From Octopus sinensis (Eukaryota), in the NCBI RefSeq assembly GCF_006345805.1, contig NC_043015.1, positions 14,260,001-14,324,000 on the forward strand: 64,000 nt of DNA. The letters run 5' to 3'. Shown piece by piece: positions 2,681 to 59,589 of this stretch (within the stretch, counting starts at the first letter, position 1; every line of letters begins with the position of its first letter). A program made the position numbers and the translations under genes. Below the pieces are notes generated by a model that saw nothing but the letters and a program-made list of their open reading frames with translations, was not told the DNA's origin and ran no database searches.

Positions 2681-3595
2681 TGAGAGAGTCTGCCAAATGT
2701 TGACCCAACTGAGGGACCAGCTATCCAAATTGAGTGTACCCTGGTAGATAAAGCAATTAAGAATATGAAGACAGGGAAAGCCCTTGGCTCATCAGGAATT
2801 ACTGCTGAGTTGCTTAAAATATCTGGCAGTGTGGATTATGGTCTAGTCACCCATATTGTAAATCAGGTGGTTCATGAAGGAATCATACCCAATGACTGGC
2901 GTAGCAGCACCATAGTAAACTGCTACAAAGGTAAAGGTAATGCCTTAGATAGAAATAATTACAGAGGTATCAAATTGTTGGATCAGGTGATGAAAGTTGA
3001 GAAGAGAGTCATAGCTCAACTAATCAGGGAGGGAGTTAATCTAGATGAAATGCAGTTTGGTTTTGTGTCACTGATGCTATATTTCTGGTAAGGCAACTGC
3101 AGGAGAAATACCTAGCCAAAGATAAACCTCTGTACTTGGCTTTTGTTGACATGGAGAAAGCCTTTGACACAGTTCCCCAATCCCTTATCCGGTGATCAGT
3201 GTGGAAACTGGAGATAGACGAGTGGCTGGTAAGAGCTGTGCAAGCCCTGTACAGGGATGCTGTCAGTAAGGTGAGGGTTGGCAACGTGTATAGTGAAGAA
3301 TTCCAAGTAGAAGTAGGGATTCACCAAGGATCAGTTCTTAGCCCCATCTTATTCATTATAGTCCTCCAGGCAATAACAGAGGAATTCAAGACAGGCTGCC
3401 CCTGGGAGCTCCTCTATGCTGATGTCCTTGCTCTTATAGCTGAATTACTACCTGAGCTAGAGAAGAAGCTCCAGGTATGGAAACAATGTCTAGAATTTAA
3501 GGGGGCCTCAGAGTTAACTTTGCAAAAACCAAAGTCATAGTAAGTAGGAAGGCAGACAAATCACAAATCCCCTCAGATAGATGGCCCTGCTCTTC
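2681..3595 (+). mobile_element. RTE-clade LINE reverse transcriptase fragment, frameshifted
   Basis: ORFs 2765..3091 and 3199..3540: KALGSSGITAELLK, YKGKG..NYRGIKLL, MQFGF, GIHQGSVLSPILF, LLYADVL. Confidence 0.9.
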
Positions 3596-4074
3596 TACTC
3601 TCTAGCCTTGGGCAGACCTAAGCTTTATGAGTCAATTTAGTCAACAGAAACTGAAAGAAGACCATTGTATGCATGTATGTATGTGAGTGTGTTAGTGCTT
3701 TCTTGTTTTGGCTCTATACATTAATTATGTCACCATCACACAAGCAGTGTCCTTTGTTTTTAATCTTCTGTGAAAAAACATGTCCAGCGTAGGGGTAGGG
3801 TAATATTACCTTACTTGGAAACAGGTGAGGGTTGGTGACAGGAAGGGTATCCAGCTATAGAAAATTGACTGCAACAAATTCTAATCTATGAAAAAGTGGA
3901 TGTTAAAATGATATATACTTATATATATTTCATTATCTTTTTAAATCCACTTTTGCATGCTTGTTATAGGTCAGTTGGAATTTACGGTTGATTTTTATAC
4001 CGCCATGCTTTTACTATTGCCAGCGTTAATCTGTTTCCAAACAAAGTAATATTTTCCTGTGGTTGAATATATTT

Positions 4075-7495: not shown

Positions 7496-9559
7496 CATGC
7501 ATGCTAATACATATGTTACATTATATAGACATGATATGTAGATATCTGAATAAAGTTTAATATTTTATTAAATGAAATCACTAAAAATTGAGCCTTATCT
7601 GCTCCAGTCTGCATTACTAATCAAGAAGTATTTATTAGAAAATGTATTTTATTTGATGTTGCTCAGTTCGGTATTTTAGGGCTATGAATCTGCCTGCTAT
7701 TAACAGAACTTCATTTGAGATTTAATATTACCCAATCAAAAGCCAGTGAGCTGGCAGAATCGTTAGCACACTAGGCAAAATAGTGCTTAGCAGCATTTTG
7801 TCTGTCTTTATGTTCTAAGTTCAAATTTTGCCAAGGCTGGTTTTGCTATTCATCCTTTCAGAGTTGATAAAATAAGCACCAGTTGAGCACTGGAGTTGAT
7901 GTAATCGACTTAACCTCTCCCCCGAAATTGTTAGCCTTGTGCTAAAATTTGAAATCAATATTACCTTATCAACCTTAACTCTGTTCAGGAAATAAATCTT
8001 CATTATCTGTCAAATGAAACTTGTTCATAACACATTAACCCTTTAGCAGACAGATTACTTTGTCAAATGTAATGCTTATTTATTCACATTTTTTGAATTA
8101 CTCATGCCTTATCTCATAGCTTTGAGATTTCGATGATGTGTTTGTTTAGTTTTTGAATGACATTGTCAGGTAGCTATGAGAGGTTGCATCTGGCCAGTTT
8201 GGATATAAAACAGGTAGAATATTTTGCCCGGATATAGCCAGTTTGATTCCTGAAAGGTTAAACTTCACTGAGTTCCTTATCTCAGAACTCTCTCTTAAGT
8301 TGTGAACTATGATATATATTCATGAAGTATTTAACACACTGTTTCAACCAGGTTTCAATGACTGACATTAGGATTGGAGTGGATATGTGCATGATAATCA
8401 GATTTGCAACACTAGTGCATGATAAAAGGGTTTGGAACAGTGATGTGAAGCAAAATTAAATTCTCACTGCATAAAGGAAAAAATAAGAAATTAACTTTGT
8501 GTAGCTCAGATTATGACATGACTTACCAGCTGTCAGTGGAAAAAGATTGGCAAATACTGATCTACTATATTTATTATTATCTCTGTCTAATCAGATTTAT
8601 TTTGGTAGGGTTATTTCTATCCTTCAGTTGGTTATAATGTTTAAGCTACCGGACTGCTAATCCAATAGTAAAGAGTTGAAACTTTGCCATGATCACACAA
8701 TTACTTATATTTGTTTACTTGCATTAATGTTCATTTTCCTATACTAACAATGGGTGGGGAGTGGGAGCAGGCGTATTTGCGGCAGGATGCTTTCCCAGTC
8801 GTCAACACTTGCCTGCTTAATCCAAAGATCTCTGAAAGCACAAAATGACCAGTCAACAAGGCGTGTTTGCTCTGCTTAAAGTGAAGCTGTAGGATATCAA
8901 CATTTACATGCATTTCCACACACACACACACACATGCACACAATACGTTTCCAACAGTTTCCTTCTATAAAATTTATTCACTAGGCATTGGTCAGTCTTG
9001 AGGCCATTGAAGAAGACACTTGTGTCACATACCTCACAGTGTGACTGAACTTGAGACCATGTTATAAAGCAAGTTTCATTCAGCCATTCTTGTGCTTGTG
9101 TGTGTGTGTGGTGGACTCTCCTGTCAATTTTGACATGTACACACAGTTGTTCAATCAGGTGAATAACCTACGAATTAAATTATTGTGTAACATGGTTGAG
9201 TTTTTTCACCCTTAATGTTTATATGTGACACTATTTTAACAAGACTATGCCTTTCATTTACATAAATGTTTTTATCAGATGCACACATGAGTCTTGGCTT
9301 GAACCAAAATAAAGACATTTGCCCAAGATACCACTCAGTGAAATTCAACTCATGACTCCTAGTTTGCAAAGAGAACTCCTTAACTACTCGAAAATGCTTG
9401 TACCTATCTATCTATTTATCATATATATATATCATCATCGTTTAACGTCCGTTCTCCATGCTAGCATGGGTTGGACGGTTCGACTGGGGATCTGGGAAGC
9501 CAGAAGGCTGCACCAGGCTCCAGTCTTATCTGGCAATGTTTCTACAGCTGGATGCCCTT

Positions 9560-9593
<34 letters not shown>

Positions 9594-9595
<2 letters not shown>

Positions 9596-9764
9596 CGCAG
9601 GAGTGGCTGTGTGGTAAGTAGCTTGCTAACCAACCACATGGTTCCGGGTTCAGTCCCACTGCGTGGCATCTTGGGCAAGTGTCTTCTGCTATAGCCCCGG
9701 GCCGACCAATGCCTTGTGAGTGGATTTGGTAGACGGAAACTGAAAGAAGCCTGTCGTATATATG

Positions 9765-9797
<33 letters not shown>

Positions 9798-10005
9798 TTG
9801 TGTGTCTGTGTTTGTCCCCCTAGCATTGCCTGACAACCGATGCTGGTGTGTTTACGTCCCCGTCACTTAGCGGTTCGGCAAAAGAGACCGATAGAATAAG
9901 TACTGGGCTTACAAAGAATAAGTTCCGGGGTCGATTTGCTCGACTAAAGGCGGTGCTCCAGCATGGCCGCAGTCAAATGACTGAAACAAGTAAAAGAGTA
10001 AAGAG
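9594..10005 (+). mobile_element. Full-length, young tRNA-derived SINE (family A, CORE-like segment cttgggcaagt) inserted in (TA)n
   Basis: tRNA-like head (gtggctgtgtggtaag...ggttccgggttcagtccc), internal TA/TG microsatellite, CpGs retained. Older copies at ~6710-7100, 13520-13700, 15017-15350, 22240-22510, 44330-44650, 58111-58534, 62600-62950. Confidence 0.85.
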
Positions 10006-10038
<33 letters not shown>

Positions 10039-10268
10039 TATTTTGTTTTTGTCTAGGTACTTTCTACTTACCATGCGTGTGCTTATTCTAGATAGTTTTC
10101 TATGTTAAATTCCCACTTCACAATTGAAATGTTACTGTTCAGAAATGGTATACATATAGCTGTGGGTGTGGATATGTGGTAAAAGCTTTGTTTCCCAACC
10201 ACATGGTTTCAGGTTCAGTCCTACTGCATGTCACTTTGGGCAAATATCATTTTACTAAACTCCCCAGA

Positions 10269-11329
10269 TTGACCAAAGCTTGAAAAAAGCCCATTGTGTG
10301 TGTGTGTATGTGTGTGAATCATTTAACATCTATTTTCCATGCTGGCATGGGTTAGACAGTTTGATTGAAGCTGGAAAGCTTCACTAGGCTCCAGTCTGTT
10401 TTGGCTTGGTTTCTATGGTTTCTAATGCCAACCATTCCATAGAGTGTTCTGGGCGTCTTTTATGTGTCACCAGCACAGGTGCCTTTTACATGTGCTTTTT
10501 ACCATGATTTCACTTTGCTTGACATGTCTTCTCAAGCACAGCAAATGACCAGAAGTCTTGGTTGCTTGGCATTGCCTCTGTGTGACTCAATGACTGAATG
10601 TGTATGGATGTGTGTATTTGTCACTTTCTCCTTTCCTTAACATAATGTTGCAGTTGTAAATGAGTGTCATTATCATCCGAGCAGTATCATTCAATTTCAC
10701 TTTTCATGAAAACATGCCTGATCTTGGGAAAATATTATCTTAGTTGAAAACAGATGAGAGTTAGTGACAGGAAGGGCATCTGGCTTTAGAAAACCTGACC
10801 CATCAAATTCTATCTGATTCTATCTTCTAATCCATCACCATATGTTCCCTTCTTTTACAGTTATATTTAAATATTACAAAATGCTTTCAGAGTTTGGTTT
10901 TATATTTAACTTTATCCTTTTGACTTCTTTCAGTAATTATGCTCCTCGGGCAGTTACCCTTCGAAAAACTCCCAATGGTTATGGCTTTGTACTACGAGGA
11001 GCTAGATGTAAGTATATCTTATCAAACATTTTAATTTTGTTTCATGATTAAACTGTGGCCATACTGATTTGCTGTGCTTGAGAAGACATGTCAAGCAAAG
11101 TGAAATCATGGTAGAAGGCACCTGTGCTGGTGACACATAAAAGACGCCCAGAACACTCTATGGAATGGTTGGCATTAGAAACCACAGAAACCAAGCCAAA
11201 ACAGACTGGAGACTGATGCAGCTTTCCAGCTCCAGTCAAACTGTCTAACCCATGCCAGCATGGAAAACAAACGTTAAATGATGATTATGATCACACATAC
11301 ACAATGGGCTTCTTTCAGTCTTTAGTCAA
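10269..11329. repeat. Inverted duplication (arms 10269-10546 and 11067-11329) around the first Shank PDZ exon
   Basis: Perfect reverse-complement blocks of 70 nt (10416-10485 / 11115-11184) and 47 nt (10500-10546 / 11067-11113), plus shorter matching blocks. Confidence 0.9.
10934..11007 (+). CDS. SHANK: Shank exon (first in window): start of PDZ domain, NYAPRAVTLRKTPNGYGFVLRGAR
   Basis: Polypyrimidine tract + ttcag acceptor, gtaagt donor, 74 nt. GYGFVLRGAR matches the Shank PDZ carboxylate-binding loop (vertebrate GFGFVLRGAK). Phase joins the next exon in frame. Confidence 0.93.
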
Positions 11330-11589
11330 GTCATGAGATTTGGCTACAGGAATAGTACTCAACTCTAGAAAATTTAACTCGATAAACTTCGTCCAACACA
11401 TGCTAGCATGGAAAAGTCAACATTAAAACAATGATAATGTTTGTGGCATAACATCCAATACAGAACATATCACAACTGCTGAAAGATTTGTGCATATGTT
11501 TGTAAATGATCTACAACATATTTGTGTGCACACTGACACTACTCATCCAGAGCATGCTGACTTCATTTCTTTTAACCCTTTGCAAGTTT

Positions 11590-11830
11590 TAAGTGGTCAC
11601 AGCCCTTGGCTCACTGCTATGGAGCATAGCTGTTCATACACAGGCATCATACAAATTGCCTTTCTGAGGGAGAGGCCCTTTGTTACTAACAGAGGTAGTA
11701 GCTCTCTGAATTTTGCCCAGCCCACTCTTATTCTAGCAGCTATGCTTTCTAGACCGCTTCCACCACTGCTAATTTGGTCACCTAAGTAACAAAAACTGTC
11801 TACTACTTCTACTGATCCCACCTGACATTT
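11590..11830 (-). mobile_element. RTE LINE fragment
   Basis: ORF 11597..11821: VEVVDSFCYLGDQIS..ARIRVGWAKFRELLPLL. Confidence 0.85.
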
Positions 11831-11955: not shown

Positions 11956-12077
11956 CTGATCATCAATTTCTTAATCATGTTTCAAATAATTCACCTGCCG
12001 TGCAGTATCTGGACACTGTGGATGCTGGTAGTGCTGCTGAAAAGGCAGGTCTTAGAGCTGGGGATTTCATATTGGAA
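11956..12077 (+). CDS. SHANK: Shank exon: PDZ core, (S)DHQFLNHVSNNSPAVQYLDTVDAGSAAEKAGLRAGDFILE
   Basis: ttttgtag acceptor, gtaagt donor, 122 nt. QYLDTVD..A..AGLR.GDFILE parallels vertebrate Shank QYLESVD..GVAWRAGLRTGDFLIE. Not in the ORF track (too short). Confidence 0.95.
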
Positions 12078-13227: not shown

Positions 13228-13399
13228 ATCAATGATGAAAATGTAACTAGAGCTTCCCATGAACACGTTGTGAAGTTAATCAAGAATTCAGGCAACATGC
13301 TGAGAATGACAGTTTTAACTGTAAAACCAACAGATCAGGACAAAAATGCATTCGTCCATGAAGATGGTTCATTCACTCTACCAAGTCGCCGAAGACAAG
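13228..13399 (+). CDS. SHANK: Shank exon: end of PDZ plus linker, INDENVTRASHEHVVKLIKNSGNMLRMTVLTVKPTDQDKNAFVHEDGSFTLPSRRRQ
   Basis: T-rich tract + aaag acceptor, gtagga donor, 172 nt, phase 0 in and phase 1 out. Classic PDZ alphaB/betaF signature. Overlaps ORF 13270..13461. Confidence 0.93.
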
Positions 13400-16695: not shown

Positions 16696-19600
16696 AAAAA
16701 CTGGATCAAACTCTTGCAGAATTTGAAGTGTGTGAAAGCCCAACAAAAGAAAATAGTTACAGTACTTATCAGAATGCAATGAAATCTGAAATAAAAACTG
16801 CTTCTATTAGGGCTGCTTATGCTAAAAAACGGCTGTCTAATATTGAAATTGATAACATTTGCTCTATGGAGGCCCCACACAAACCTGATCGTTTAAGCCC
16901 CTCAGAAGTGCGCATTAAAAAATACCACAAAAAGACAAGCAGTCTAGAAAAATCTCGAAGTACACCAAATCTTGCTCCTGACTTAGATTATGCACAAATT
17001 TCTTCTGGAAACAGTTCTTACAGCAGCAATTCCTCTGGACTTTTGAGAAGTCAACAAGCCAAAATGAATGCCAGTCAGATAAATCAGTTGTATCCTGCAC
17101 CATATCTGGGAAGTCTTTCTCAACCTCCACCAGGAATGGATTTATCTGGTTGTAGACATTCAGTTGCTATTGGCTCTTCTGTGCATATCAATTCTTTACC
17201 AAGCAGAGGTAAAGCTTACCCAGTTCCTCCACCTGTGGTGTCAAACCATTATGTTTCTCCTAAAGAGCATATTCCTCCTCCTCCACAAGTTATAACAATA
17301 AATACACAGAATGATCAGTCAGTTAATTCTACGGGAGAATCAACCAAACACAATTCTTATGAATCAAGTTTCAGACCTGGAACTGTGGCAGTATTTGGTA
17401 ATAATAAAAAATTAGTTACAAACCAATCTTCAGTCAATCAGGCAAAATCTCATAAACCACAAGATAGTTTGAATAGAAATAAATCTGCAAACAACTTCAA
17501 TTCTAATCTGAATAGTGTAACTAAAACAGTAATTGCAGATGTTCATCACATTGACCAGTCACAAGGTACTCAACACTATTCAAATGGTACACACGATACA
17601 TACTATGAACCTCAGCCCGACTATGAATCTGATGGAGAGGACAACTTAGCACATGATGGCAATGGTAATATTATTTCAGTTGGTTCAAATCTCACTAAAA
17701 ATAGAATGTCTTTGGCGGTACCTCTATCTTCATCTTCTTCCTCATCTGAGAGTTTCAAGACAGCATCAACTACTCCTTCTTTTCAAAATACTGTAGACCC
17801 ACAAATAATTCCTCCTCCACCTGAATTCTGTCCACCTCCTCCACCTGAATTTTCTCATGCTCCTCCTGCCCCTCCTCCTCCTCCATCTAATCAATTATGT
17901 GCCGTTCCTCCTCCCCCTCCTCAATTCAGTTCTGCTCCTCTTCCTGAATCCCAGGACAGTCAAGCAGCAGACCCAGGAAATGAATTACTAAATGAAATTA
18001 AACGTGCTGCACAGGAAAGACAGAATCGATGTAAAGATGAAATTCCAGAGAAGACCACACCCAAACCCACTAGTGTCAACTTAACTCCACAAGATAAAAA
18101 TCAAGCAGAAATTTTACAAGCTGTAGCAAAACGACGTTCAATGCTGGAAAATTCTGATGAAAATATTGTTGTAAATCAAATTGAAGCCCAAATTCACAAA
18201 GCTAAGAAACTACAATATTCTAAGTATTATTTCACTGGCAATAGAATGAAAAAAGTAGTGAAAGAATTACCTGAGGAGAACACATTAGAGGTTGAGGAGA
18301 ATAAACAGAACACTGAAGAAAACAAACCAGTTGTTAAAGAGAACAAACCAGTAGTTAAAGAAAGCAAACCAGTTGTTAAAGAGAACAAACCAGTTGTTAA
18401 AGATGCTAAAGTAGATGTTAAACAGAAAGGATTAAATGAAGGAAAAATAAACTCAGCTTCTTCAGAAGACAAACCTATATCTAAAGTAGTTTTGAAACCT
18501 AAGCTTTTGGAAAGATCTACTGACAAGCTGCCAACAGAAAGTAATAGTAATAAGACTACAGTAAAAACACTACAAAATCAAGCTATAAAATCTCAGAACG
18601 GTAAAGTAGAACCACATGTAAATGATGATTCCAAGAAAGGTCAAGAAGATTTTCTAATTAAAGCTGAAAAAGCACGGCAGAGGTACCTAAGTCGGAAATC
18701 ATTAGGTACGAACAATGAAACGGCTGATAAAGCCAACAGAACAGCTACACAAACTGAAATATCTGATAAGCCAAACAACATAAATGCACATACTAAAACA
18801 TCAGATAAACCAAACAGTACAGCAACACATACTGAGACAATAGATAAACCAAACAAAATAGCTATAAATAATGAAAAATCTGACAAACTAAACAGTACAG
18901 CTACAAATAATGTCAAATCTGATAAGTCATACAACATAGCTAGAGTTAATGAGAATAAGACATACAACTCTAAAAAAGAACCTGAACCTTGTGTAATCAG
19001 CCACAAAACTGTGGAAAAAAATAAGATAAACACTGACCAAACCAGACATGGAGTACAGAACAAAACCAATCCATTGATTAAGAGAACGACCAGTAAGGTG
19101 CACATTGAAATAAAACCAGCTCTAAATGTTTCATCAAAACCAATTAGTGGTGTGTCCATAAAAGAAAGAATTGCTAATTTACAAAACAACAATGGACTTG
19201 CTACAAATAATTCAAGGGATGGAGTGAAGTTAATAACTGTAAAGGGAGTGACTACAGGTCATTCTAATACTGACCCATCTAATTCTTCAGATTGTTCAAC
19301 TCCTAGTCAATCTCCATATCATACCAGTTTTGTAACAATCGTTGCACCACCTCCTGGGTTTTGTGATTCTGACACAGATGAAAGGGCTACTGATGAGCTT
19401 CCATCATACCCCACTCTACAAACTTTACCGGCTCCACTATCTGAGTTATCTATTTCGGTTGATCAGATTGGAGATATACATCCACCAGATGATTCTCTGA
19501 GCCTTATCTCTTCTCTTTCAACACTGTCAACACTCTCTACCTCAAGCACAGAACATCCAATTGACATTGTCCATCCACCACCAACTAGCTTTCAAGATGG

Positions 19601-19979
19601 TTCTAGCCCTGTATCAACAGATCAAGGTTTTGAAGAATCATTTATAGCAGCACCACAAGAATTTAATGAACCATTGAAAAAACACAATATAACAAAACAT
19701 TCTTATCAAAATAAATCAGTTGAAGAGTGGTTGTACGTGGATGTTCTTGAGTGGCTTGATAGCTTAAAACTGACACAATATAAAACTAATTTTTCTCATC
19801 ATTGTATTGATGGTAAAAAATTGCTTAACCTTAACAGAAATGATTACTTAATGCTTGGTATTACACAAGTTACTCATCGACTGAATTTGGAGAAGGCCAT
19901 CAAAAAGGCTTTACTGGCATCAAAAAGCTGTCAGAAAAGTCCAGTGACCAGTAAAATTTCATCATCAATGTCTCACTGA
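16696..19979 (+). CDS. SHANK: Shank terminal coding exon: EKLD motif, proline-rich region with PPxxF motifs, SAM domain, stop TGA
   Basis: ttcag acceptor at 16695, in frame with ORF 16728..19979 (1083 aa). SAM domain EEWLYVDVLEWLDSLKL..HCIDGKKLL..LGITQVTHRLNLEKAI aligns to Shank SAM. Confidence 0.95.
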
Positions 19980-38413: not shown

Positions 38414-38797
38414 TGGCAAAATGCACATCCTTAAAGCTGAACTAAATTTAGTCTTCATTAAGAAACAGTAAAATGAAAATGCTTAACAATAAAGGTAAGG
38501 TTCTATATTTAAGAGATGAGGAATTATGTACATTATTTACATTTGATGGATATTTGTCCTCATCTTGTTTGTTGTTAACACAACGTTTTGGCTGATATAC
38601 CCTCCTGGCAAAATGCACATCCTTAAAGCTGAACTAAATTTAGTCTTCATTAAGAAACAGTAAAATGAAAATGCTTAACAATAAAGGTAAGGTTCTATAT
38701 TTAAGAGATGAGGAATTATGTACATTATTTACATTTGATGGATATTTGTCCTCATCTTGTTTGTTGTTAACACAACGTTTTGGCTGATATACCCTCC
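38414..38797. repeat. Exact 192-bp tandem duplication (38414-38605, 38606-38797)
   Basis: Both units start tggcaaaatgcacatcc and end ggctgatataccctcc. Confidence 0.92.
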
Positions 38798-39040
38798 AGT
38801 CTTCATCACAGGCATATAGCGTGGTTAAGAGTGCAGGCTACTAACCCCAAGATTCTGAGTTCGATTCCAGGCAGTGACCTGAATAATAATAATAACATCG
38901 AAAAATGCCTTAGGAATAAGAACCGAGGTTCGAAATTTCCCCAAAACACCTGATGAAGGCTGGAGGGTATATCAGCCGAAACATTGTGTTAACAACAAAC
39001 AAGATGAGGACAAATATCCATCAATTGTAAATAATGTAAA
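38711..39040 (+). mobile_element. Composite element: inverted truncated terminus (38711-38808) + tRNA-derived head (38811-38870) + hammerhead-like motif + Penelope-type tail
   Basis: B-box gttcgattcc and degenerate A-box in the head; ~95-nt arms are reverse complements; CTGATGA...GAAA core at 38950-38981. Confidence 0.75.
38945..38990 (+). ncRNA. Minimal type I hammerhead ribozyme-like motif
   Basis: AACAC-CTGATGA-A-GGCTG-loop-CAGCC-GAAA-CA-TT-GTGTT: perfect 5-bp stem I and 5-bp stem II with canonical CUGAUGA and GAAA. The inverted copy keeps CG instead of CA. Confidence 0.6.
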
Positions 39041-40985
39041 TAAAGGTAGGCCTCTGCCTCTAGACTTGAGAAGTCGACCAAATGGTAATATACCATAAGA
39101 CAGGGCTTCTCACAACTTTCCTTTCAGCATACTAAATCATTATGTCTGACAGAGTAGATGTAATCTTTGTGAAAGATACAGTATAAAACAGTTAAGTACC
39201 GTAAAACACAGACATGTATAATTTTTTATTAATATGAATTAATTTAAATCTCACTTTACTAAAATTTTCCCTTCATTCGTTGAGTTGATAGAATAAAGTA
39301 CCAATCAAGTACTAGGGTTGATATGGTTGATTGTCTCCTCTCCTAAACTTTCTGACTTCCTTCCCATGTAAGAAATAATCACTTTAATTCAATGTTACTT
39401 GCTTTTAATAAGATGGATGAGTGTGGCTCTTCCTAACAATTAACCCCGATTTTACAATGAATGAAATATTTTCAGAGTTGGGAGAACTGAGGGTTTCATC
39501 ATCTTTAATAATGAAAAACAAAAATCCAAATATTATCAACCATTTGATGCAAAACAACAATTTTTGTAAGCTGTATAATTACATTCTGCACTATATAACA
39601 GATTGCTGGAATCATTTCTTTCAAGTCTTTAGTAAGACTGTATTCAAGAAGAAAATGTTCAGAAACTGCATTGCCGTAATCATTATTAAGACAGATTATA
39701 TGTTGTTAATTACCTCAAGGTTTATTAATATACAAAAACTGAATCCCTTCTATAATAGATTGTGAGTAGTTATCAATTTTTCCAGCAGATTTTCATTCTC
39801 CATTGTAGATAGACCTGATTAGTTAGTTTTCCTGCATTTATACCTTTCACTCCAGATTTTCACAGCATTTTATGTGTGATACAATTCTCATGCTGGCTAA
39901 AACCTTTGCTTTTTTGACAAACCATTGTGTCATTTAGTAAATCCTTCAACTTTAGACATTTAGTATTTAAAGTAGCCATATATAACCTCAAATATGCTAC
40001 CTGTTTTATGTTCAAATCAACTAGATCCAGCCTCTCAAACCTACGCTACAATGTCATTCTAAAAACAATCACATCATTGAAATCTCAAAGCTACAAGATA
40101 ATGGATGATTAATTCAAAACAAAGTGAATAAACATTGCATTTCACAGAGTAAGCCAAATACTAAAGGGTTAAAGCAATTGACAGCACTCTGGAATGCCAA
40201 CAGCATAACAGGAAGTAAGATTGGAATGAACTAAAAATGTTAGGGTCTACCAATGGACTACGAAGTACTGATAGTTTAAATAGTTGGCATTACATCTAAT
40301 CCAGTTTGGTAAAAGAATTAAGTTATGCAGATTGTGACATCAGCTGCTCAACCAGTTAATGTTTGGTACAACATTGCAGATTCAACAGTGCATGAATGAG
40401 TTATGAAAGAAATCTTCTTGGTCTTGTGATTTTCACAAGTTTTGAAAGTATTACAACTTCCAAATGAAAACATTGACAAATGTCCTTTTTCTCATTTCAT
40501 TGAAGATATCTATATTAAAATTTTTTTTAAACCACACAAAATGGATATATATGATAATGGGAAACGTCACCACGAAAATTCATAATTATGTTGCATTGTT
40601 ACTTTGTCTATTCAAATATGCATTGCTTACTGAGGTTGGGGGAGGGTGCATGTCAGAACTATATCACTCCTTTAATACCATACATGAGTGTGAAGTCAAA
40701 TAACTTTGTGGTTAGGACATACAATAGCAAGGTTTTGAATCTCGTTTCCAAACCAGAAGGTGCATTGTCTCTGGTGAACTGCTGCACTGGAGTGTTTGTA
40801 GTTATAGCCATATATAGCATAAGAGAAACAATACAGGTACAAATAATGGAGAATAGTGAGAACCAACATACGAAAAAAAGAAAAGAAAAGAAATAAAATA
40901 AAACCTAAATACTTATGATGATTTTTTTTAAATATTACAACCACCACCACTAACAATAATAACTAGCAACAACAGCAAATTTTTT

Positions 40986-49480: not shown

Positions 49481-49964
49481 TGCAAGCATGGCTGTGAGGT
49501 AAGAAGTTTGCTTCCCAACCACATGGTTCCAGGTTTTGTCCCAGTGCCTGGCACCTTGTCAAGTGTCTTCTGTTATAGGGTCGGGCTGATCAAAGTGTTG
49601 TGAGTGGATTTGGTAGACAGAAACTGTAAGGCAGTCAGCTGGCAAAAACATCAGCACACCGGACGAAATGCTTAGCGGTATTTCGCCTGCCATTATGTTC
49701 TGAGTCCAAATTCCACTGAGGTCGACTTTGCCTTTCATCCTTTCGGGGGTCGATGAAATAAGTACCAGTTACGCACTGGGATTGATGTAATCGACTTAAT
49801 CTGTTTGTCTCTCCTTGTTTGTCCCCTCTGTGTGTAGCCCTTTGTGGGCAGTAAAGAAATAAGAAACTGAAAGAAGCTCGTTATATATATATATATAGTC
49901 CCATCCATGCTAGCATGGAAAATGGACTTTAAATGATGATGATGATATATATATGTATGTATAT

Positions 49965-50375
49965 CATCATCATCATCATCATTTAGCGTCCGTTTTCCAT
50001 GCTAGCATGGGTTGGACGGTTCTACTGGGGTCTGTGAAGCCGGAAGGCTTCATCAGGCCCAGTCAAATCTGGCAGTGTTTCTACGGCTGGATGCCCTTCC
50101 TAACGCCAACCACTCCGTGAGTGTAGTGGGTGCTTTTTATGTGCCACCCGCACAGGTGCCAGACAGAGCTGGCAAACGGCCACGAACGGATGCTGCTTTT
50201 TACGTGCCACCGGCACGAGGCCTGTCGGGGCGGCGCTGGCAACGGTCGTGAAACGGAAGGTTCTCTTACATGCCACCGGCACTGGTAACACATCTGCAAT
50301 TTCCATTGATCGATTTCGATTCTGATCCTCACTTGCCTCAACAGGTCTTCACAAGTAGAGTTTGTGTCCCAAGAA
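49965..50375 (-). mobile_element. RTE-tailed SINE / LINE 3' end (family C, (GAT)n tail); other copies at ~9424, 10318, 11067, 23170, 30405, 35778, 45625
   Basis: Recurrent catcatcatc-gtttaacgtccgttttccatgctagcatgggttggac...ggatgcccttcctaacgccaacc. Confidence 0.8.
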
Positions 50376-57720: not shown

Positions 57721-59589
57721 TAAAAAAAAAATGCATGTATGTATGATGTATGTATGTATGAATGTATGATTTATGTATGTATGTATGTATGTATATATCT
57801 ATGTGTGTTTCGTCGGTGTTTGTCCCCAACCACTACTTCACAATGGGTGTTGGTGTGTTTATATCCTGTTACTTAGTAGTTCAGCAAAAGTGATCAATAG
57901 AATAAGCACTAGGCTTTAAAAAAAGTACTAGACTTGATTCATTCAACTAAAAGTTCTTCAAGGCTGTGTCCCAGCATAATCTGGCTCGCCAGTCCTCAGT
58001 CAAATCATCCAACCCATGCAAGCATGGAAAGTGGACGTTAAACGATGATGATGATGATGATTGTTTTGAATTAATCATGCATTATTTTGTAGATTTGAGA
58101 TTTTGATGAGGTATTTACTCTTTTACTTGTTTCAGACATTTGACTGTGGCAGTGCTGGAGTACCAACTTTAGTCGAGCAAATCGACCCCAGGACTTATTC
58201 TTTGTAAGCCTAATACTTATTCTATTGGTCTCTTTTGCCGAATCGCTAAGTAATGGGGATGTAAACACACCAGCATCGGTTGTCAAGCGATGTTGGGGGG
58301 ACAAAGACAGACACACAAACATATACACACACATACATATATATATATACATATATATATATACATATATATGACAGGCTTCTTTCAGTTTCTGTCTACC
58401 AAATCCACTCACAAGGCTTTGGTTGGCCCGAGGCTATAGTAGAAGACACTTGCCCAAGTTGCCGTGCAGTAGGACTGAACCCGGAACCATGTGGTTGGTA
58501 AGCAAGCTACTTGCCACACAGCCACTCTTGTACCTACTTGTTAATTTTTAGAATGATATTGTTGGGTAAGTCTGAGAAGCCAAATCAGGCTAGTTTGAAC
58601 TTAAAACAAGTAGAATATTTTGGCCAGATATGGCTGGTTTAAATACTAAAGGGTTAATACATTGACCTCATTAGTCTCAGAGAGCTTGCAAAGGCCTTGA
58701 GCACAGCTCTCTCCTCCAGAACAATTTAATAGAAAAAAAATTAGGTGATTGTTCCCAAATGTTTGTAAATAAAAAGAAACTGTTTCTCACACAGACAAGA
58801 GAAAATTAGATCCACAATAAAACAGGGTTGGAAATATGCATAGCAACAACTTGCTATGTAAGTAAAACTAATAAAAGGAGAGAATATGAGAAATACGGAA
58901 TTTTCTGTCTGAGAACTCTTTTCTCTTTTTTGATAAGAAAAGAAGTTGGGATCGTGTTGAGTAAATATTGATCTCTAGTGCCTCATCAATAATTTTTACA
59001 TTGAACTGTGCTTGTAAATAACAATGGGCAATGCTAAATTTAAGGTTATTGTGATTTTTGAAAACAAAAAAAGAACCTTAAAAGTGGTACTTTATCTTCA
59101 GTATGAGTACATGAGTTAAGCAAATAACTTTAATCATGGACTAATATCTAAAAATATAGTCTCTTTTGTTGAAGACAGCAAATAATGACTGTCTCCTGAT
59201 ATAATGCTTCTATTATCTTTAATGCAAATTGATTGAACTTGAGCAAATAAGTCAAGCCACTACTACTACTACTACTGCTAGTAGTAGTAGTAGTAGTAAG
59301 ACCAATACATTAATGCTAGTCAAGACTTGTTAATAATATCTCTTATTGATACTTCAATATTTCATTAAATATTTCTTAATCTTCGCCATTCATCTATTCC
59401 CTAGGAATTTTCATACATCTCCTGCCTTCAAAACAACAACAGTGGTGTCAATGAGTAAATTAATTCTTCAATTGTGTTAAAACCCCACCCAGAAAAACTT
59501 GTATTATTGAGACAAATTTAGAAATCATACTCATATATTTTTAACAATAGGGCTGAGAGAAAATATCTCAGGAGAATTCTGCATACTAA

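What the first reader, a model, noticed from the sequence alone, without database searches (positions are those of the whole stretch)
10269..11329. Near-identical inverted duplication loops out the first Shank PDZ exon
Arms 10269-10546 and 11067-11329 are reverse complements, with perfect blocks of 70 and 47 nt. Both share the same SINE-A/SINE-C chimeric junction and both lack the ggatgcccttcc segment seen in other family-C copies. They therefore look like a local inverted duplication or gene-conversion pair, not two independent insertions. The ~520-nt loop contains the 74-nt exon encoding the PDZ ligand-binding GYGF loop, and the right arm starts 60 nt after its donor site. A stem of this length in pre-mRNA could promote exon skipping, which would shift the frame because 74 is not a multiple of 3. 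It is also a prime ADAR substrate in a lineage known for extensive neural A-to-I editing.
Basis: partly seen in the sequence, partly recalled or inferred. Interest (0 to 1): 0.7.

Follow-up and report, generated by a model that had tools for sequence, protein, structure and literature searches.

The report
Inverted retroposon pair around Shank exon
Two copies of the same mobile element sit in opposite orientation on either side of the first PDZ-coding exon of a Shank-like synaptic gene and should pair into a ~244-bp RNA stem; this arrangement is already known from human Alu pairs, and whether it affects splicing or editing here is untested.

Summary
Arms 10269-10546 and 11067-11329 are reverse complements: 93% identity over aligned bases, with perfect blocks of 70 and 47 nt. 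They enclose a 520-nt loop that holds a 74-nt exon (10934-11007) encoding NYAPRAVTLRKTPNGYGFVLRGAR, the start of a Shank-type PDZ domain. The predicted RNA duplex has 244 bp (net about -292 kcal/mol), the strongest inverted pair in the window.

The anatomy needs correcting. Each arm lies antisense inside the microsatellite of a different tRNA-type SINE. The two copies differ in 5' truncation (37 nt), tail length and host. A third such nesting lies at ~49.9 kb, so the shared junction is a target preference, not one unique event.

Identity is mosaic: 18 mismatches in the outer 143 aligned nt and none in the inner 118 (P≈3e-4). The shared 10-nt deletion lies inside the perfect tract. That argues for recent arm-to-arm gene conversion or templated copying.

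Skipping the exon would create an immediate TGA. ADAR editing, skipping and circularisation are plausible by analogy with inverted Alu pairs but untested. The genome-wide copy test could not be run. This is a new member of a known kind, of modest interest.

The parts
10157..10317 (+). Host SINE of the left arm: tRNA-type 'SINE-A' head, middle and (TG)n microsatellite, with a private 27-nt deletion
   Evidence: nhmmer with a SINE-A profile built from window copies matches model positions 3-188, E = 1.3e-26. See also alignment A2.
10318..10583 (-). Left family-C copy, a LINE-3'-end-derived retroposon antisense to the gene. Its true 3' end (..GGAAAATAGATGTTAAATGAT) is at 10318 and its 5' truncation point is near 10583.
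   Evidence: The reverse complement translates to ...THASMENRC*. The host SINE resumes at 10584. The stretch 10547-10581 is weakly similar to the continuation of copy c30617 (P about 0.03).
10269..10546 (.). Left arm of the inverted repeat, as defined by the finding
10416..10546 (.). Inner tract of the left arm. It has no substitution against 11067-11184 (118 aligned nt) and one 13-nt indel (10486-10499, absent from R). The shared 10-nt deletion lies between 10418 and 10419.
10584..10815 (+). Continuation of the left host SINE (microsatellite remnant plus body) inside the loop. It is collinear with an uninterrupted paralogue at 3660-3887.
   Evidence: Local alignment score 70, 0 of 500 shuffles as good. 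It also matches 44215-44090.
10934..11007 (+). 74-nt coding exon, the first exon of the PDZ domain (NYAPRAVTLRKTPNGYGFVLRGAR, with the GYGF carboxylate-binding loop). It starts with the third base of a split codon and ends with the first base of another.
11029..11066 (-). Remnant of a SINE-A 3' tail (host of the right arm), reaching to about 21 nt from the exon's donor site
   Evidence: Local alignment to the SINE-A tail scores 19, with 0 of 1000 and 0 of 5000 shuffles as good. nhmmer matches model positions 354-385, E = 0.011.
11067..11291 (+). Right family-C copy, sense to the gene. It is 5'-truncated at 11067 and ends in the 3' tail ...GGAAAACAAACGTTAAATGATGATTATGAT.
   Evidence: It translates to ...LTHASMENKR*.
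11292..11329 (-). Short microsatellite plus the SINE-A middle segment of the right host. This is the outermost part of the right arm.
   Evidence: nhmmer matches model positions 150-177, E = 3.9e-5. Beyond 11329 there is no significant similarity to SINE-A or to the left flank.
11067..11329 (.). Right arm of the inverted repeat, as defined by the finding
11385..11450 (+). A further, severely 5'-truncated family-C copy (about 60 nt of the 3' tail) just outside the right arm
11956..12077 (+). Second PDZ exon. If 10934-11007 is skipped, the reading frame hits TGA at 11957-11959.
13228..13399 (+). Third PDZ exon
16728..19979 (+). Long open reading frame that ends at the gene's stop codon. It is read here as the large last coding exon of the same gene, with proline-rich stretches and a C-terminal SAM domain. 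The acceptor site inside this range was not mapped.
   Evidence: ORF listing. Pfam SAM_1, E = 1.6e-17.

Best explanation
The two arms are sister copies of one subfamily of a LINE-3'-end-derived retroposon ('family C'). Each lies antisense inside the internal microsatellite of a different tRNA-type SINE, and the two sit in opposite orientation on either side of the first PDZ exon of a Shank-like gene.

Origin. The copies most likely began as two separate events, or as one full copy plus one short copy. Their inner 131 nt were later made identical by a local DNA-level exchange between the arms: gene conversion, or templated copying from the longer left copy into the right one. That exchange also carried the 10-nt deletion.

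Predicted behaviour. In the pre-mRNA the arms are predicted to pair into a stem of about 244 bp that closes a 520-nt loop holding the exon and both its splice sites. By analogy with inverted Alu pairs, the near-certain consequence, if the intron is transcribed where ADAR is active, is promiscuous A-to-I hyper-editing of both arms. A possible but probably minor consequence is some loop-out skipping of the exon, which would give an immediate TGA and thus an unproductive or truncated product. Back-splicing is another possibility.

Status of each step. Shown: the sequence anatomy, the orientation, the nesting, the mosaic identity and the predicted duplex. Inferred: the conversion event, the editing and any splicing effect.
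For: Arms and perfect blocks.

True orientation and LINE origin of family C. Metagenome contig L004 carries a 1012-aa ORF with endonuclease and reverse-transcriptase domains ending ...LTHASMENGR*, followed by ccatgctagcatggaaaatggacgttaaa and then (gat)n. The other end is ragged, as expected for 5' truncation.

Hosts. The SINE-A profile maps model positions 3-188 in front of L, and only positions 150-177 and 354-385 around R. The SINE-A tail next to R is significant (0/5000 shuffles). L's host resumes at 10584 and is collinear with an uninterrupted paralogue (0/500).

Recurrent nesting: a third family-C-in-SINE-A-microsatellite case lies at about 49.9 kb.

Mosaic identity. There are 18 mismatches in 143 outer aligned nt and 0 in 118 inner (Fisher P = 2e-5). 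Within the C part alone the counts are 10/98 vs 0/118 (P = 2.8e-4). A mismatch-free run this long has permutation P = 2.5e-4. The outer C part diverges by about 10%, like another same-subfamily pair in the window (9431-9563 vs 49972-50102, 89.5%). Homology ends abruptly at 10546/11067.

Local duplication is active nearby: a perfect 192-nt tandem duplication with a 95% inverted copy of sequence found nowhere else in the window lies at 38.4-39.0 kb.

Stem. The minimum-free-energy fold of 10250-11350 pairs the arms end to end (-531 kcal/mol). Cofolding gives 244 intermolecular bp and net -292 kcal/mol. The 18 mismatched positions become 8 A·C mismatches, 7 G·U wobbles and 3 others.

Literature. 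Neighbouring inverted repeats are the main hyper-editing substrates across Metazoa, and Octopus bimaculoides has an exceptionally high hyper-editing rate and fraction of loci forming long dsRNA (PMC5625713). Loop-out exon skipping by inverted Alu pairs is described in PMC13019027; the abstract of PMC10901737, seen in the listing, links an Alu insertion to tail loss.
Against: No RNA data of any kind were available, so editing, skipping and circularisation are unobserved.

The species' genome could not be searched. A dispersed subfamily with the same deletion and the same inner sequence would explain the shared traits without local exchange. The mosaic could then reflect differences between two source elements rather than conversion.

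The 13-nt indel sits inside the 'perfect' tract and needs a later event.

No target-site duplications could be identified for either copy.

The evidence that L's copy extends past 10546 is weak when taken alone (P about 0.03). It rests mainly on where the host SINE resumes.

The exon has a consensus GTAAGT donor and a good pyrimidine tract. In humans the effect of inverted pairs on skipping is small (effect size d = -0.12) and is concentrated on weak-acceptor exons.

A strongly skipping allele would destroy the PDZ, proline-rich and SAM parts of the protein and should be selected against.

The upstream exon was not located, so it is inferred, not shown, that the left arm lies in the same intron-containing transcript.
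Confidence: 0.5

Rival explanations
1. Both arms are ordinary, independent retrocopies of one young subfamily, or of two closely related source elements. No DNA-level exchange occurred. The shared deletion and inner sequence are subfamily traits, and the mosaic reflects differences between source elements or uneven mutation.
For: The two copies share a 3' end but differ in 5' truncation, tail length, host microsatellite length and host SINE. Insertion of family C into SINE-A microsatellites is recurrent. Octopus vulgaris is reported to have about 900 recently active SINE families, with SINEs making up 11.6% of the genome, so private-looking subfamilies are expected (PMC13282606). Dispersed same-subfamily pairs in the window reach 89% identity.
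Against: No third copy of this subfamily lies in the 64 kb window, yet the two copies are only 520 nt apart. Within the element, 0/118 against 10/98 mismatches is very unlikely under one age (P about 3e-4). Five or more CpG sites of the family consensus are decayed identically in both inner halves, while a CpG is still intact in the outer half of R (reading of alignment A1).
Confidence: 0.25
2. The right arm arose as a single local inverted segmental duplication of 10269-10546.
For: The copies are close together and share a subfamily seen nowhere else in the window. R is contained within L in extent. Homology ends abruptly on the inner side. A local tandem plus inverted duplication of sequence found nowhere else in the window exists at 38.4-39.0 kb.
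Against: Homology does not extend into non-repeat flanking sequence on either side. R is embedded collinearly between a SINE-A middle segment and a SINE-A tail, which a random landing site would rarely provide. A single duplication predicts uniform divergence, not 10% next to 0%. Tail and microsatellite lengths differ at the junction.
Confidence: 0.15
3. The stem is a selected regulatory device. It would act as an editing- or temperature-tunable switch that controls inclusion of the PDZ exon, through unproductive splicing or a PDZ-less Shank isoform, or production of a circular RNA.
For: This is the strongest duplex in the window, and it is placed exactly around a frame-breaking exon. Repeat sequence is tolerated to within about 21-60 nt of the donor. 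[quoted passage not shown]
Against: There is no conservation or expression evidence. The perfect tract looks recent, not anciently maintained. Inverted pairs are frequent in this sequence and in octopus generally. Both splice sites match consensus. A 74-nt circle would be unusually small (general knowledge).
Confidence: 0.05
4. Assembly artefact: a falsely inverted or patched repeat.
For: Perfect inverted tracts can arise from chimeric long reads. This is general knowledge and was not tested here.
Against: The arms differ by 18 substitutions and several indels, have different hosts and ends, and enclose a bona fide exon with intact splice sites that continues into two further in-frame PDZ exons.
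Confidence: 0.03

Closest known systems
Inverted Alu pairs that loop out an exon (genome-wide analysis in Denisko et al. 2026, PMC13019027; TBXT Alu insertion linked to tail loss, Xia et al. 2024, PMC10901737, abstract only read here)
   Same: Two copies of one short retroposon family lie in opposite orientation in the flanking introns. They are predicted to form a long stem that encloses an exon with both its splice sites. Skipping would change the protein.
   Different: The repeat family is different (a LINE-tail-derived element nested in tRNA-type SINEs, not 7SL-derived Alu) and so is the phylum. The arms are much closer to the exon and to each other (520-nt loop). Skipping here would be frame-breaking with an immediate stop. 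No skipped isoform has been observed for this locus.
Inverted-repeat SINE pairs as ADAR hyper-editing substrates (Athanasiadis et al. 2004, PMC526178, from the listing; Porath et al. 2017, PMC5625713)
   Same: A long, nearly perfect intramolecular dsRNA formed by neighbouring inverted repeats within one pre-mRNA. Octopus is reported as one of the two strongest hyper-editing species.
   Different: Editing at this locus was not measured.
Circular-RNA biogenesis driven by flanking inverted repeats (reviewed in PMC11263572, from the listing; mechanism from general knowledge)
   Same: Complementary repeats bring the downstream donor and the upstream acceptor of the enclosed exon together.
   Different: The enclosed exon is only 74 nt, far below typical single-exon circles. 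No back-splice evidence exists.
Arm-to-arm gene conversion between closely spaced inverted repeats or palindrome arms, and instability of close inverted Alu pairs (general knowledge)
   Same: A tract of complete identity is embedded in older, diverged homology between two nearby inverted copies, with a sharp tract boundary.
   Different: The arms are short (about 270 nt). Only one candidate tract is seen. No population or outgroup data confirm an exchange or its direction.
SINEs and 5'-truncated copies that carry a partner LINE's 3' end, and modular 'jigsaw' SINEs of molluscs (PMC4758252, PMC5786205, from the listing)
   Same: Family C ends with the last codons, hairpin and short tandem-repeat tail of an endonuclease plus reverse-transcriptase LINE. 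Copies share the 3' end and are ragged at the 5' end.
   Different: The 5' head of family C was not identified in the window. The partner LINE was seen only in metagenome contigs from other organisms, about 65% identical to the window's own reverse-transcriptase fragment over that region.

Membership tests
Exon-flanking inverted retroposon pair (loop-out exon skipping type) | Two same-family repeats in opposite orientation, one on each side of an internal exon | tested here: met
   Arms 10269-10546 and 11067-11329 flank exon 10934-11007.
Exon-flanking inverted retroposon pair (loop-out exon skipping type) | The arms are predicted to form a stable intramolecular stem enclosing the exon | tested here: met
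   The minimum-free-energy structure pairs the arms. Cofolding gives 244 bp and net -292 kcal/mol.
Exon-flanking inverted retroposon pair (loop-out exon skipping type) | A skipped isoform exists and depends on the pair | not testable with these tools
   No RNA data are available, and neither the protein nor the contig look-ups returned any sequence from this gene.
Exon-flanking inverted retroposon pair (loop-out exon skipping type) | Weak 3' acceptor, the context in which the human effect is concentrated | tested here: inconclusive
   The acceptor ttatccttttgacttctttcag and the donor GTAAGT look strong by eye. No species-specific splice-site score was available.
ADAR hyper-editing substrate | Long, nearly perfect dsRNA within one transcript | tested here: met
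   Perfect helices of 71 and 47 bp lie within a 244-bp duplex. That both arms are co-transcribed is inferred.
ADAR hyper-editing substrate | Clusters of A-to-G mismatches in RNA reads | not testable with these tools
   No RNA-seq access.
Inverted-repeat-driven circular RNA | Back-splice junction reads (11007 to 10934) | not testable with these tools
   No RNA-seq access. The 74-nt exon is atypically short.
Local segmental (non-retroposition) inverted duplication | Homology continues past the repeat-element boundaries into unique flanking sequence | tested here: not met
   The inner end is abrupt at 10546/11067 and the flanks are not similar. The outer flanks beyond 10269/11329 are not significantly similar (133/1000 shuffles as good).
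Gene-conversion tract between paralogous repeats | A run of identity significantly longer than expected from the overall divergence of the pair | tested here: met
   0/118 against 18/143 mismatches. Permutation P = 2.5e-4. Within the C part, Fisher P = 2.8e-4.
Gene-conversion tract between paralogous repeats | Discordant relationships for tract and flanks using other family members or orthologous loci | not testable with these tools
   There are no other subfamily members in the window and no access to the genome or to sister species.
Independent LINE-mediated retrocopies of one family | Common 3' end with tail, and different 5' truncation points | tested here: met
   Both copies end ...THASMEN..* plus a GAT-type tail. 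L extends to about 10583 and R stops 37 nt earlier. The tails differ in length.
Independent LINE-mediated retrocopies of one family | Separate target-site duplications | tested here: inconclusive
   Both targets are microsatellites. L is flanked by TG-rich host sequence on both sides. R has a host deletion instead.
Shank (SH3 and multiple ankyrin repeat domains) scaffold proteins | PDZ domain closest to Shank PDZ domains | tested here: met
   The top solved-structure hits are Shank1 and Shank3 PDZ, E = 3.5e-20 to 1e-18. Pfam PDZ, E = 7e-15.
Shank (SH3 and multiple ankyrin repeat domains) scaffold proteins | Long proline-rich region followed by a C-terminal SAM domain | tested here: met
   The ORF 16728-19979 has PPPPEF-type runs and SAM_1 at E = 1.6e-17.
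Shank (SH3 and multiple ankyrin repeat domains) scaffold proteins | N-terminal ankyrin repeats and SH3 domain | tested here: inconclusive
The upstream exons are probably outside it.

The most novel reading that the evidence does not exclude
A recently homogenised inverted retroposon pair works as an editing-tunable switch in neurons, for example one that responds to temperature or neural activity. When the stem is intact it loops out the first PDZ exon, giving an immediate stop and hence unproductive splicing or a PDZ-less Shank. ADAR hyper-editing melts the stem and restores inclusion. This would couple the lineage's heavy RNA editing to the dosage of a core postsynaptic scaffold.
Probability: 0.06. 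Interest if true: 0.75.

Novelty: new member of a known kind. Interest (0 to 1): 0.3.

Why it matters
If the stem forms in vivo, it would be a clear invertebrate counterpart of loop-out exon skipping by inverted Alu pairs, sitting on the ligand-binding exon of a Shank-type synaptic scaffold. It offers a compact, testable case: two arms of about 270 nt, a 520-nt loop and a 74-nt exon. That layout could show how repeat-derived dsRNA, ADAR editing and splicing interact in an animal with very heavy editing.

The mosaic identity also gives a small, clean example of probable arm-to-arm homogenisation lengthening a perfect dsRNA stem.

As it stands, this is an ordinary consequence of a repeat-rich intron. 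Inverted pairs occur about once per 8 kb in this window, and no functional evidence exists.

Tried and rejected
1. I searched the protein database with a 78-aa open frame of the right arm to find dispersed copies. It returned nothing.
2. I searched it with the joined 122-aa PDZ domain to identify the species and its isoforms. Nothing scored at E <= 1e-10. That cut-off may have hidden single-exon fragments, but a full-length orthologue would have passed.
3. An exact look-up of the ORF spanning the exon found no record.
4. Scans of metagenome, prokaryote-genome and viral contigs with the deletion-junction 22-mer gave 0 hits. These negatives are uninformative, because none of the searches returned any sequence from this genome.
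5. A control scan with the conserved family-C core found 8 metagenome contigs. They share only about 40-70 nt of the tail, and three of them also match the window's reverse-transcriptase fragment. They were useless for counting subfamily copies, but they were decisive for orienting family C.
6. ARAGORN and Rfam found no tRNA or RNA family in 9300-11600, only microsatellite noise.
7. Full-text searches for SINE sequence strings found no paper. One paper (PMC4795812) was not held.
8. I rejected the idea that one arm is an ADAR-edited retrocopy of the other. The mismatches run in all four transition directions, with no A-to-G excess.
9. I first read L's post-arm segment 10547-10598 as a SINE-A tail, which would have meant identical truncation in both arms. 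The match is weak (55/5000 shuffles as good) and the SINE-A profile does not report it. The better-supported reading is that it belongs to the family-C copy and that the host SINE resumes at 10584.
10. The 'CCCATTG' variant shared by both arms' SINE-A segments is not private to them. It also occurs at 3653, 15118 and 57379.
11. The exon region alone has no unusual local structure (z = -0.15).
Full report
**1. The observation**

- The repeat finder reports three collinear inverted blocks covering 10269-10546 and 11067-11329.
- A global alignment of the left arm with the reverse complement of the right arm has 243 matches, 18 mismatches and 19 gap columns. That is 93% over aligned bases. The longest perfect runs are 70 and 47 nt.
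- The loop between the arms is 520 nt.
- It contains a 74-nt exon, 10934-11007, bounded by a pyrimidine-rich acceptor (...ttatccttttgacttctttcag|) and a consensus donor (|gtaagt).
- The right arm begins 60 nt after the donor.

**2. The gene**

- The exon encodes NYAPRAVTLRKTPNGYGFVLRGAR.
- The joined 122 aa match Pfam PDZ (E = 7e-15). Their best solved relatives are the Shank1 and Shank3 PDZ domains (E = 3.5e-20).
- A 1083-aa open frame at 16728-19979 carries proline-rich runs and a C-terminal SAM domain.
- The gene is therefore Shank-like and lies on the + strand. The exon in the loop encodes the start of the PDZ domain, including the GYGF carboxylate-binding loop.
- The exon starts with the third base of a split codon. 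If it is skipped, the frame reads NN+C and then TGA at 11957-11959. A skipped mRNA would stop before the PDZ, proline-rich and SAM regions and would be a candidate for nonsense-mediated decay (inference).
- The upstream exon was not found in the window.

**3. What the arms are**

That is backwards.
- A control scan of metagenome contigs with the conserved core returned contigs from other organisms. One of them, L004, holds a 1012-aa single ORF with endonuclease, reverse-transcriptase and PHD-like domains.
- That ORF ends ...LTHASMENGR*. It is followed by a short hairpin-containing stretch (ccatgctagcatgg) and a (gat)n tail. L006 shows the same arrangement.
They are ragged at the other end, and four of them are only 50-60 nt long.
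- Family C is therefore a retroposon carrying a LINE 3' end. It has a shared 3' end and variable 5' truncation.
- The right arm holds a copy in the sense of the gene (11067 to about 11291). The left arm holds an antisense copy (3' end at 10318).

**4. Nesting in host SINEs**

A profile of the tRNA-type 'SINE-A', built from window copies, maps as follows.
- Model positions 3-188 lie immediately in front of the left copy (10157-10317), with a private 27-nt deletion.
- Around the right copy only positions 150-177 (11319-11292) and 354-385 (11067-11037) match.

Further points on the hosts:
- The SINE-A tail next to the right arm is significant in shuffle tests (0/1000 and 0/5000). It brings repeat sequence to about 21 nt from the donor.
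- After the left copy, the host SINE resumes at 10584 and runs to 10815. This stretch is collinear with an uninterrupted paralogue at 3660-3887 (score 70, 0/500 shuffles).
- The left copy (10318-10583) is therefore a clean insertion into its host's microsatellite.
- The right copy is 37 nt shorter at its 5' end and has a longer tail (ATCATAATCATC against ATC). It abuts a shorter host microsatellite (10 nt against 23 nt), and its host lacks its body.
- Both copies are antisense to their hosts.
- A third SINE-A, at about 49.5-49.9 kb, also has family-C fragments in its microsatellite. Other copies abut (TA)n runs.
- The 'same chimeric junction' is thus a recurrent target preference, not a shared unique event.
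- The 'CCCATTG' variant of the SINE-A middle segment that both arms share also occurs at 3653, 15118 and 57379.

**5. Are the arms more alike than two ordinary copies?**

In the window they are each other's closest relatives by far.
- Other family-C copies are 67-79% identical to them.
- Only these two lack CTGGATGCCC.
- Dispersed pairs of young subfamilies in the same window reach 89% identity, so overall identity alone is not exceptional.

What is exceptional is the distribution of differences.
- All 18 substitutions lie in the outer 143 aligned positions, and none in the inner 118 (10416-10546 against 11184-11067). The inner tract differs only by one 13-nt indel.
- Within the family-C part alone the counts are 10/98 against 0/118 (Fisher P = 2.8e-4).
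- A mismatch-free run of this length has permutation P = 2.5e-4.
- The switch point lies 3 nt from the shared 10-nt deletion, which is therefore inside the perfect tract.
- In the inner half, CpG sites of the family consensus are decayed identically in both arms. In the outer half, one arm still keeps a CpG that the other has lost (my reading of alignment A1).
- On the inner side, identity falls from 100% to nothing detectable at 10546/11067.
- On the outer side it fades through the microsatellite and about 37 nt of SINE-A. Beyond 10269/11329 it is not significant.

**6. Origin: best reading and rivals**

The different truncation points, tails and hosts argue against a single segmental inverted duplication. 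They fit separate insertions, or a full left copy plus a shorter right copy. The two-age pattern then needs a later local exchange that made the inner 131 nt identical. This could be arm-to-arm gene conversion bounded by the end of homology. It could also be templated copying from the longer left copy into the right one, which would explain the missing host body and the arbitrary end at 11067 as well. This is inference.

The main rival is that a dispersed subfamily, or two related source elements, accounts for everything. Octopus vulgaris is reported to have about 900 recently active SINE families (PMC13282606), so this cannot be dismissed.

The test that would decide is a search of the species' genome, and it could not be run. 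Searches of the protein database, the contig index and the metagenome, prokaryote and viral collections returned no sequence from this genome.

A perfect 192-nt tandem duplication, with a 95% inverted copy of sequence found nowhere else in the window, lies at 38.4-39.0 kb. It shows that local DNA-level duplication, including inverted copies, happens in this region.

**7. Predicted RNA behaviour**

- Folding 10250-11350 as RNA pairs the arms end to end (-531 kcal/mol).
- Cofolding the arms gives 244 intermolecular base pairs, with helices of 71 and 47 bp. The net gain is about -292 kcal/mol, against -72 to -153 for the other inverted pairs whose energy was computed.
- The 18 differing positions become 8 A·C mismatches, 7 G·U wobbles and 3 other mismatches in the + strand RNA.
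- A·C mismatches are favoured ADAR contexts (general knowledge).
- The exon region itself has no unusual local structure (z = -0.15).

**8. Comparison with what is known**

- Neighbouring inverted repeats in one pre-mRNA are the main hyper-editing substrates across animals. Octopus bimaculoides is reported to have an exceptionally high hyper-editing rate and fraction of loci forming long, nearly perfect dsRNA (PMC5625713).
- A genome-wide study describes inverted Alu pairs promoting 'loop-out' exon skipping (PMC13019027). The abstract of PMC10901737, seen in the listing, links an Alu insertion to hominoid tail loss.
- That study also shows the general effect is small (d = -0.12). It is concentrated on short exons with weak acceptors and short downstream introns. 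Repeats are normally depleted within about 100 bp of exons.
- Here the exon is short (74 nt) and the downstream intron is short (948 nt), and repeat sequence comes unusually close to the donor. Both splice sites, however, look strong.
- My estimates: hyper-editing of the arms is likely if the intron is expressed where ADAR is active. Appreciable skipping is possible but unlikely to be large. A 74-nt circular RNA is unlikely.
The repeats match my recollection of octopus SINEs, but no tool result confirms the species.

**9. Verdict**

The junction argument and the element orientation are wrong. A simple inverted duplication is unlikely. A gene-conversion-like homogenisation of the inner half is supported by new evidence. 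The functional claims remain untested analogies.
- The feature is a new member of a known kind, an exon-flanking inverted retroposon pair. Its base rate is high in this sequence, with 8 inverted pairs in 64 kb.
- Interest is modest (0.3). It is a good, compact candidate for an RNA-seq check and a minigene test, but it would not surprise a specialist.

Noticed in passing
window 38414-39043: 38414-38605 and 38606-38797 are a perfect (100%) 192-nt head-to-tail duplication. Its last 82-93 nt recur inverted at 38951-39043 at 95% identity, 142 nt downstream. A tRNA-like SINE head lies in the spacer. The unit has no other copy in the window, so this looks like a very recent local duplication of non-repeat sequence.
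   Followed up: partly
L004 154-3273; L006 1-240; window family-C copies: The last codons (...THASMENGR*), a CCATGCTAGCATGG hairpin and a (GAT)n tail of an endonuclease plus reverse-transcriptase LINE are 85-95% conserved over about 40-70 nt between the window's family-C copies and LINEs on metagenome contigs from other organisms. The rest of those LINEs is only about 65% similar to the window's reverse-transcriptase fragment. This points to a strongly conserved 3' recognition module.
   Followed up: partly
window 2912-3540 (+): Fragment of a LINE reverse-transcriptase ORF (Pfam RVT_1, E = 3.5e-7). It is about 64-69% identical to the LINEs on L004, L006 and L008. It lies upstream of the PDZ exons on the gene's strand.
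   Followed up: no
window 9437-10005: A family-C copy (9437-9561) abuts, through a (TA)n run at 9562-9593, a young full-length SINE-A (9594-10005) that is 89% identical to another at 58114-58536. This is a further case of SINE-A and family C adjoining at a microsatellite.
   Followed up: partly
window 49489-50160: A SINE-A whose internal (TA)n microsatellite holds two family-C fragments in opposite orientation (cores near 49921 on the - strand and 49994 on the + strand), lying tail to tail and forming a small inverted repeat. This is the third nesting of this type in the window.
   Followed up: partly
window 11957-11959: If exon 10934-11007 is skipped, the second codon of the next exon is TGA. 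The skipped product would end immediately before the PDZ domain.
   Followed up: yes
window 11008-11066: Repeat-derived sequence (an antisense SINE-A tail) reaches to about 21 nt from the donor site. That is well inside the ~100-bp zone from which Alu elements are depleted around human exons.
   Followed up: partly
window 16728-19979: The large terminal Shank coding ORF contains tandem peptide repeats (NKPVVKE x4; DKPN/DKLN-type repeats) between the proline-rich part and the SAM domain.
   Followed up: no
window 10407-10424: The shared 10-nt deletion leaves a perfect 9-nt tandem TGGTTTCTA TGGTTTCTA in the left arm (TGGTTTCTG TGGTTTCTA in the right). The change from diverged to identical sequence between the arms falls 3 nt from the deletion point.
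   Followed up: partly
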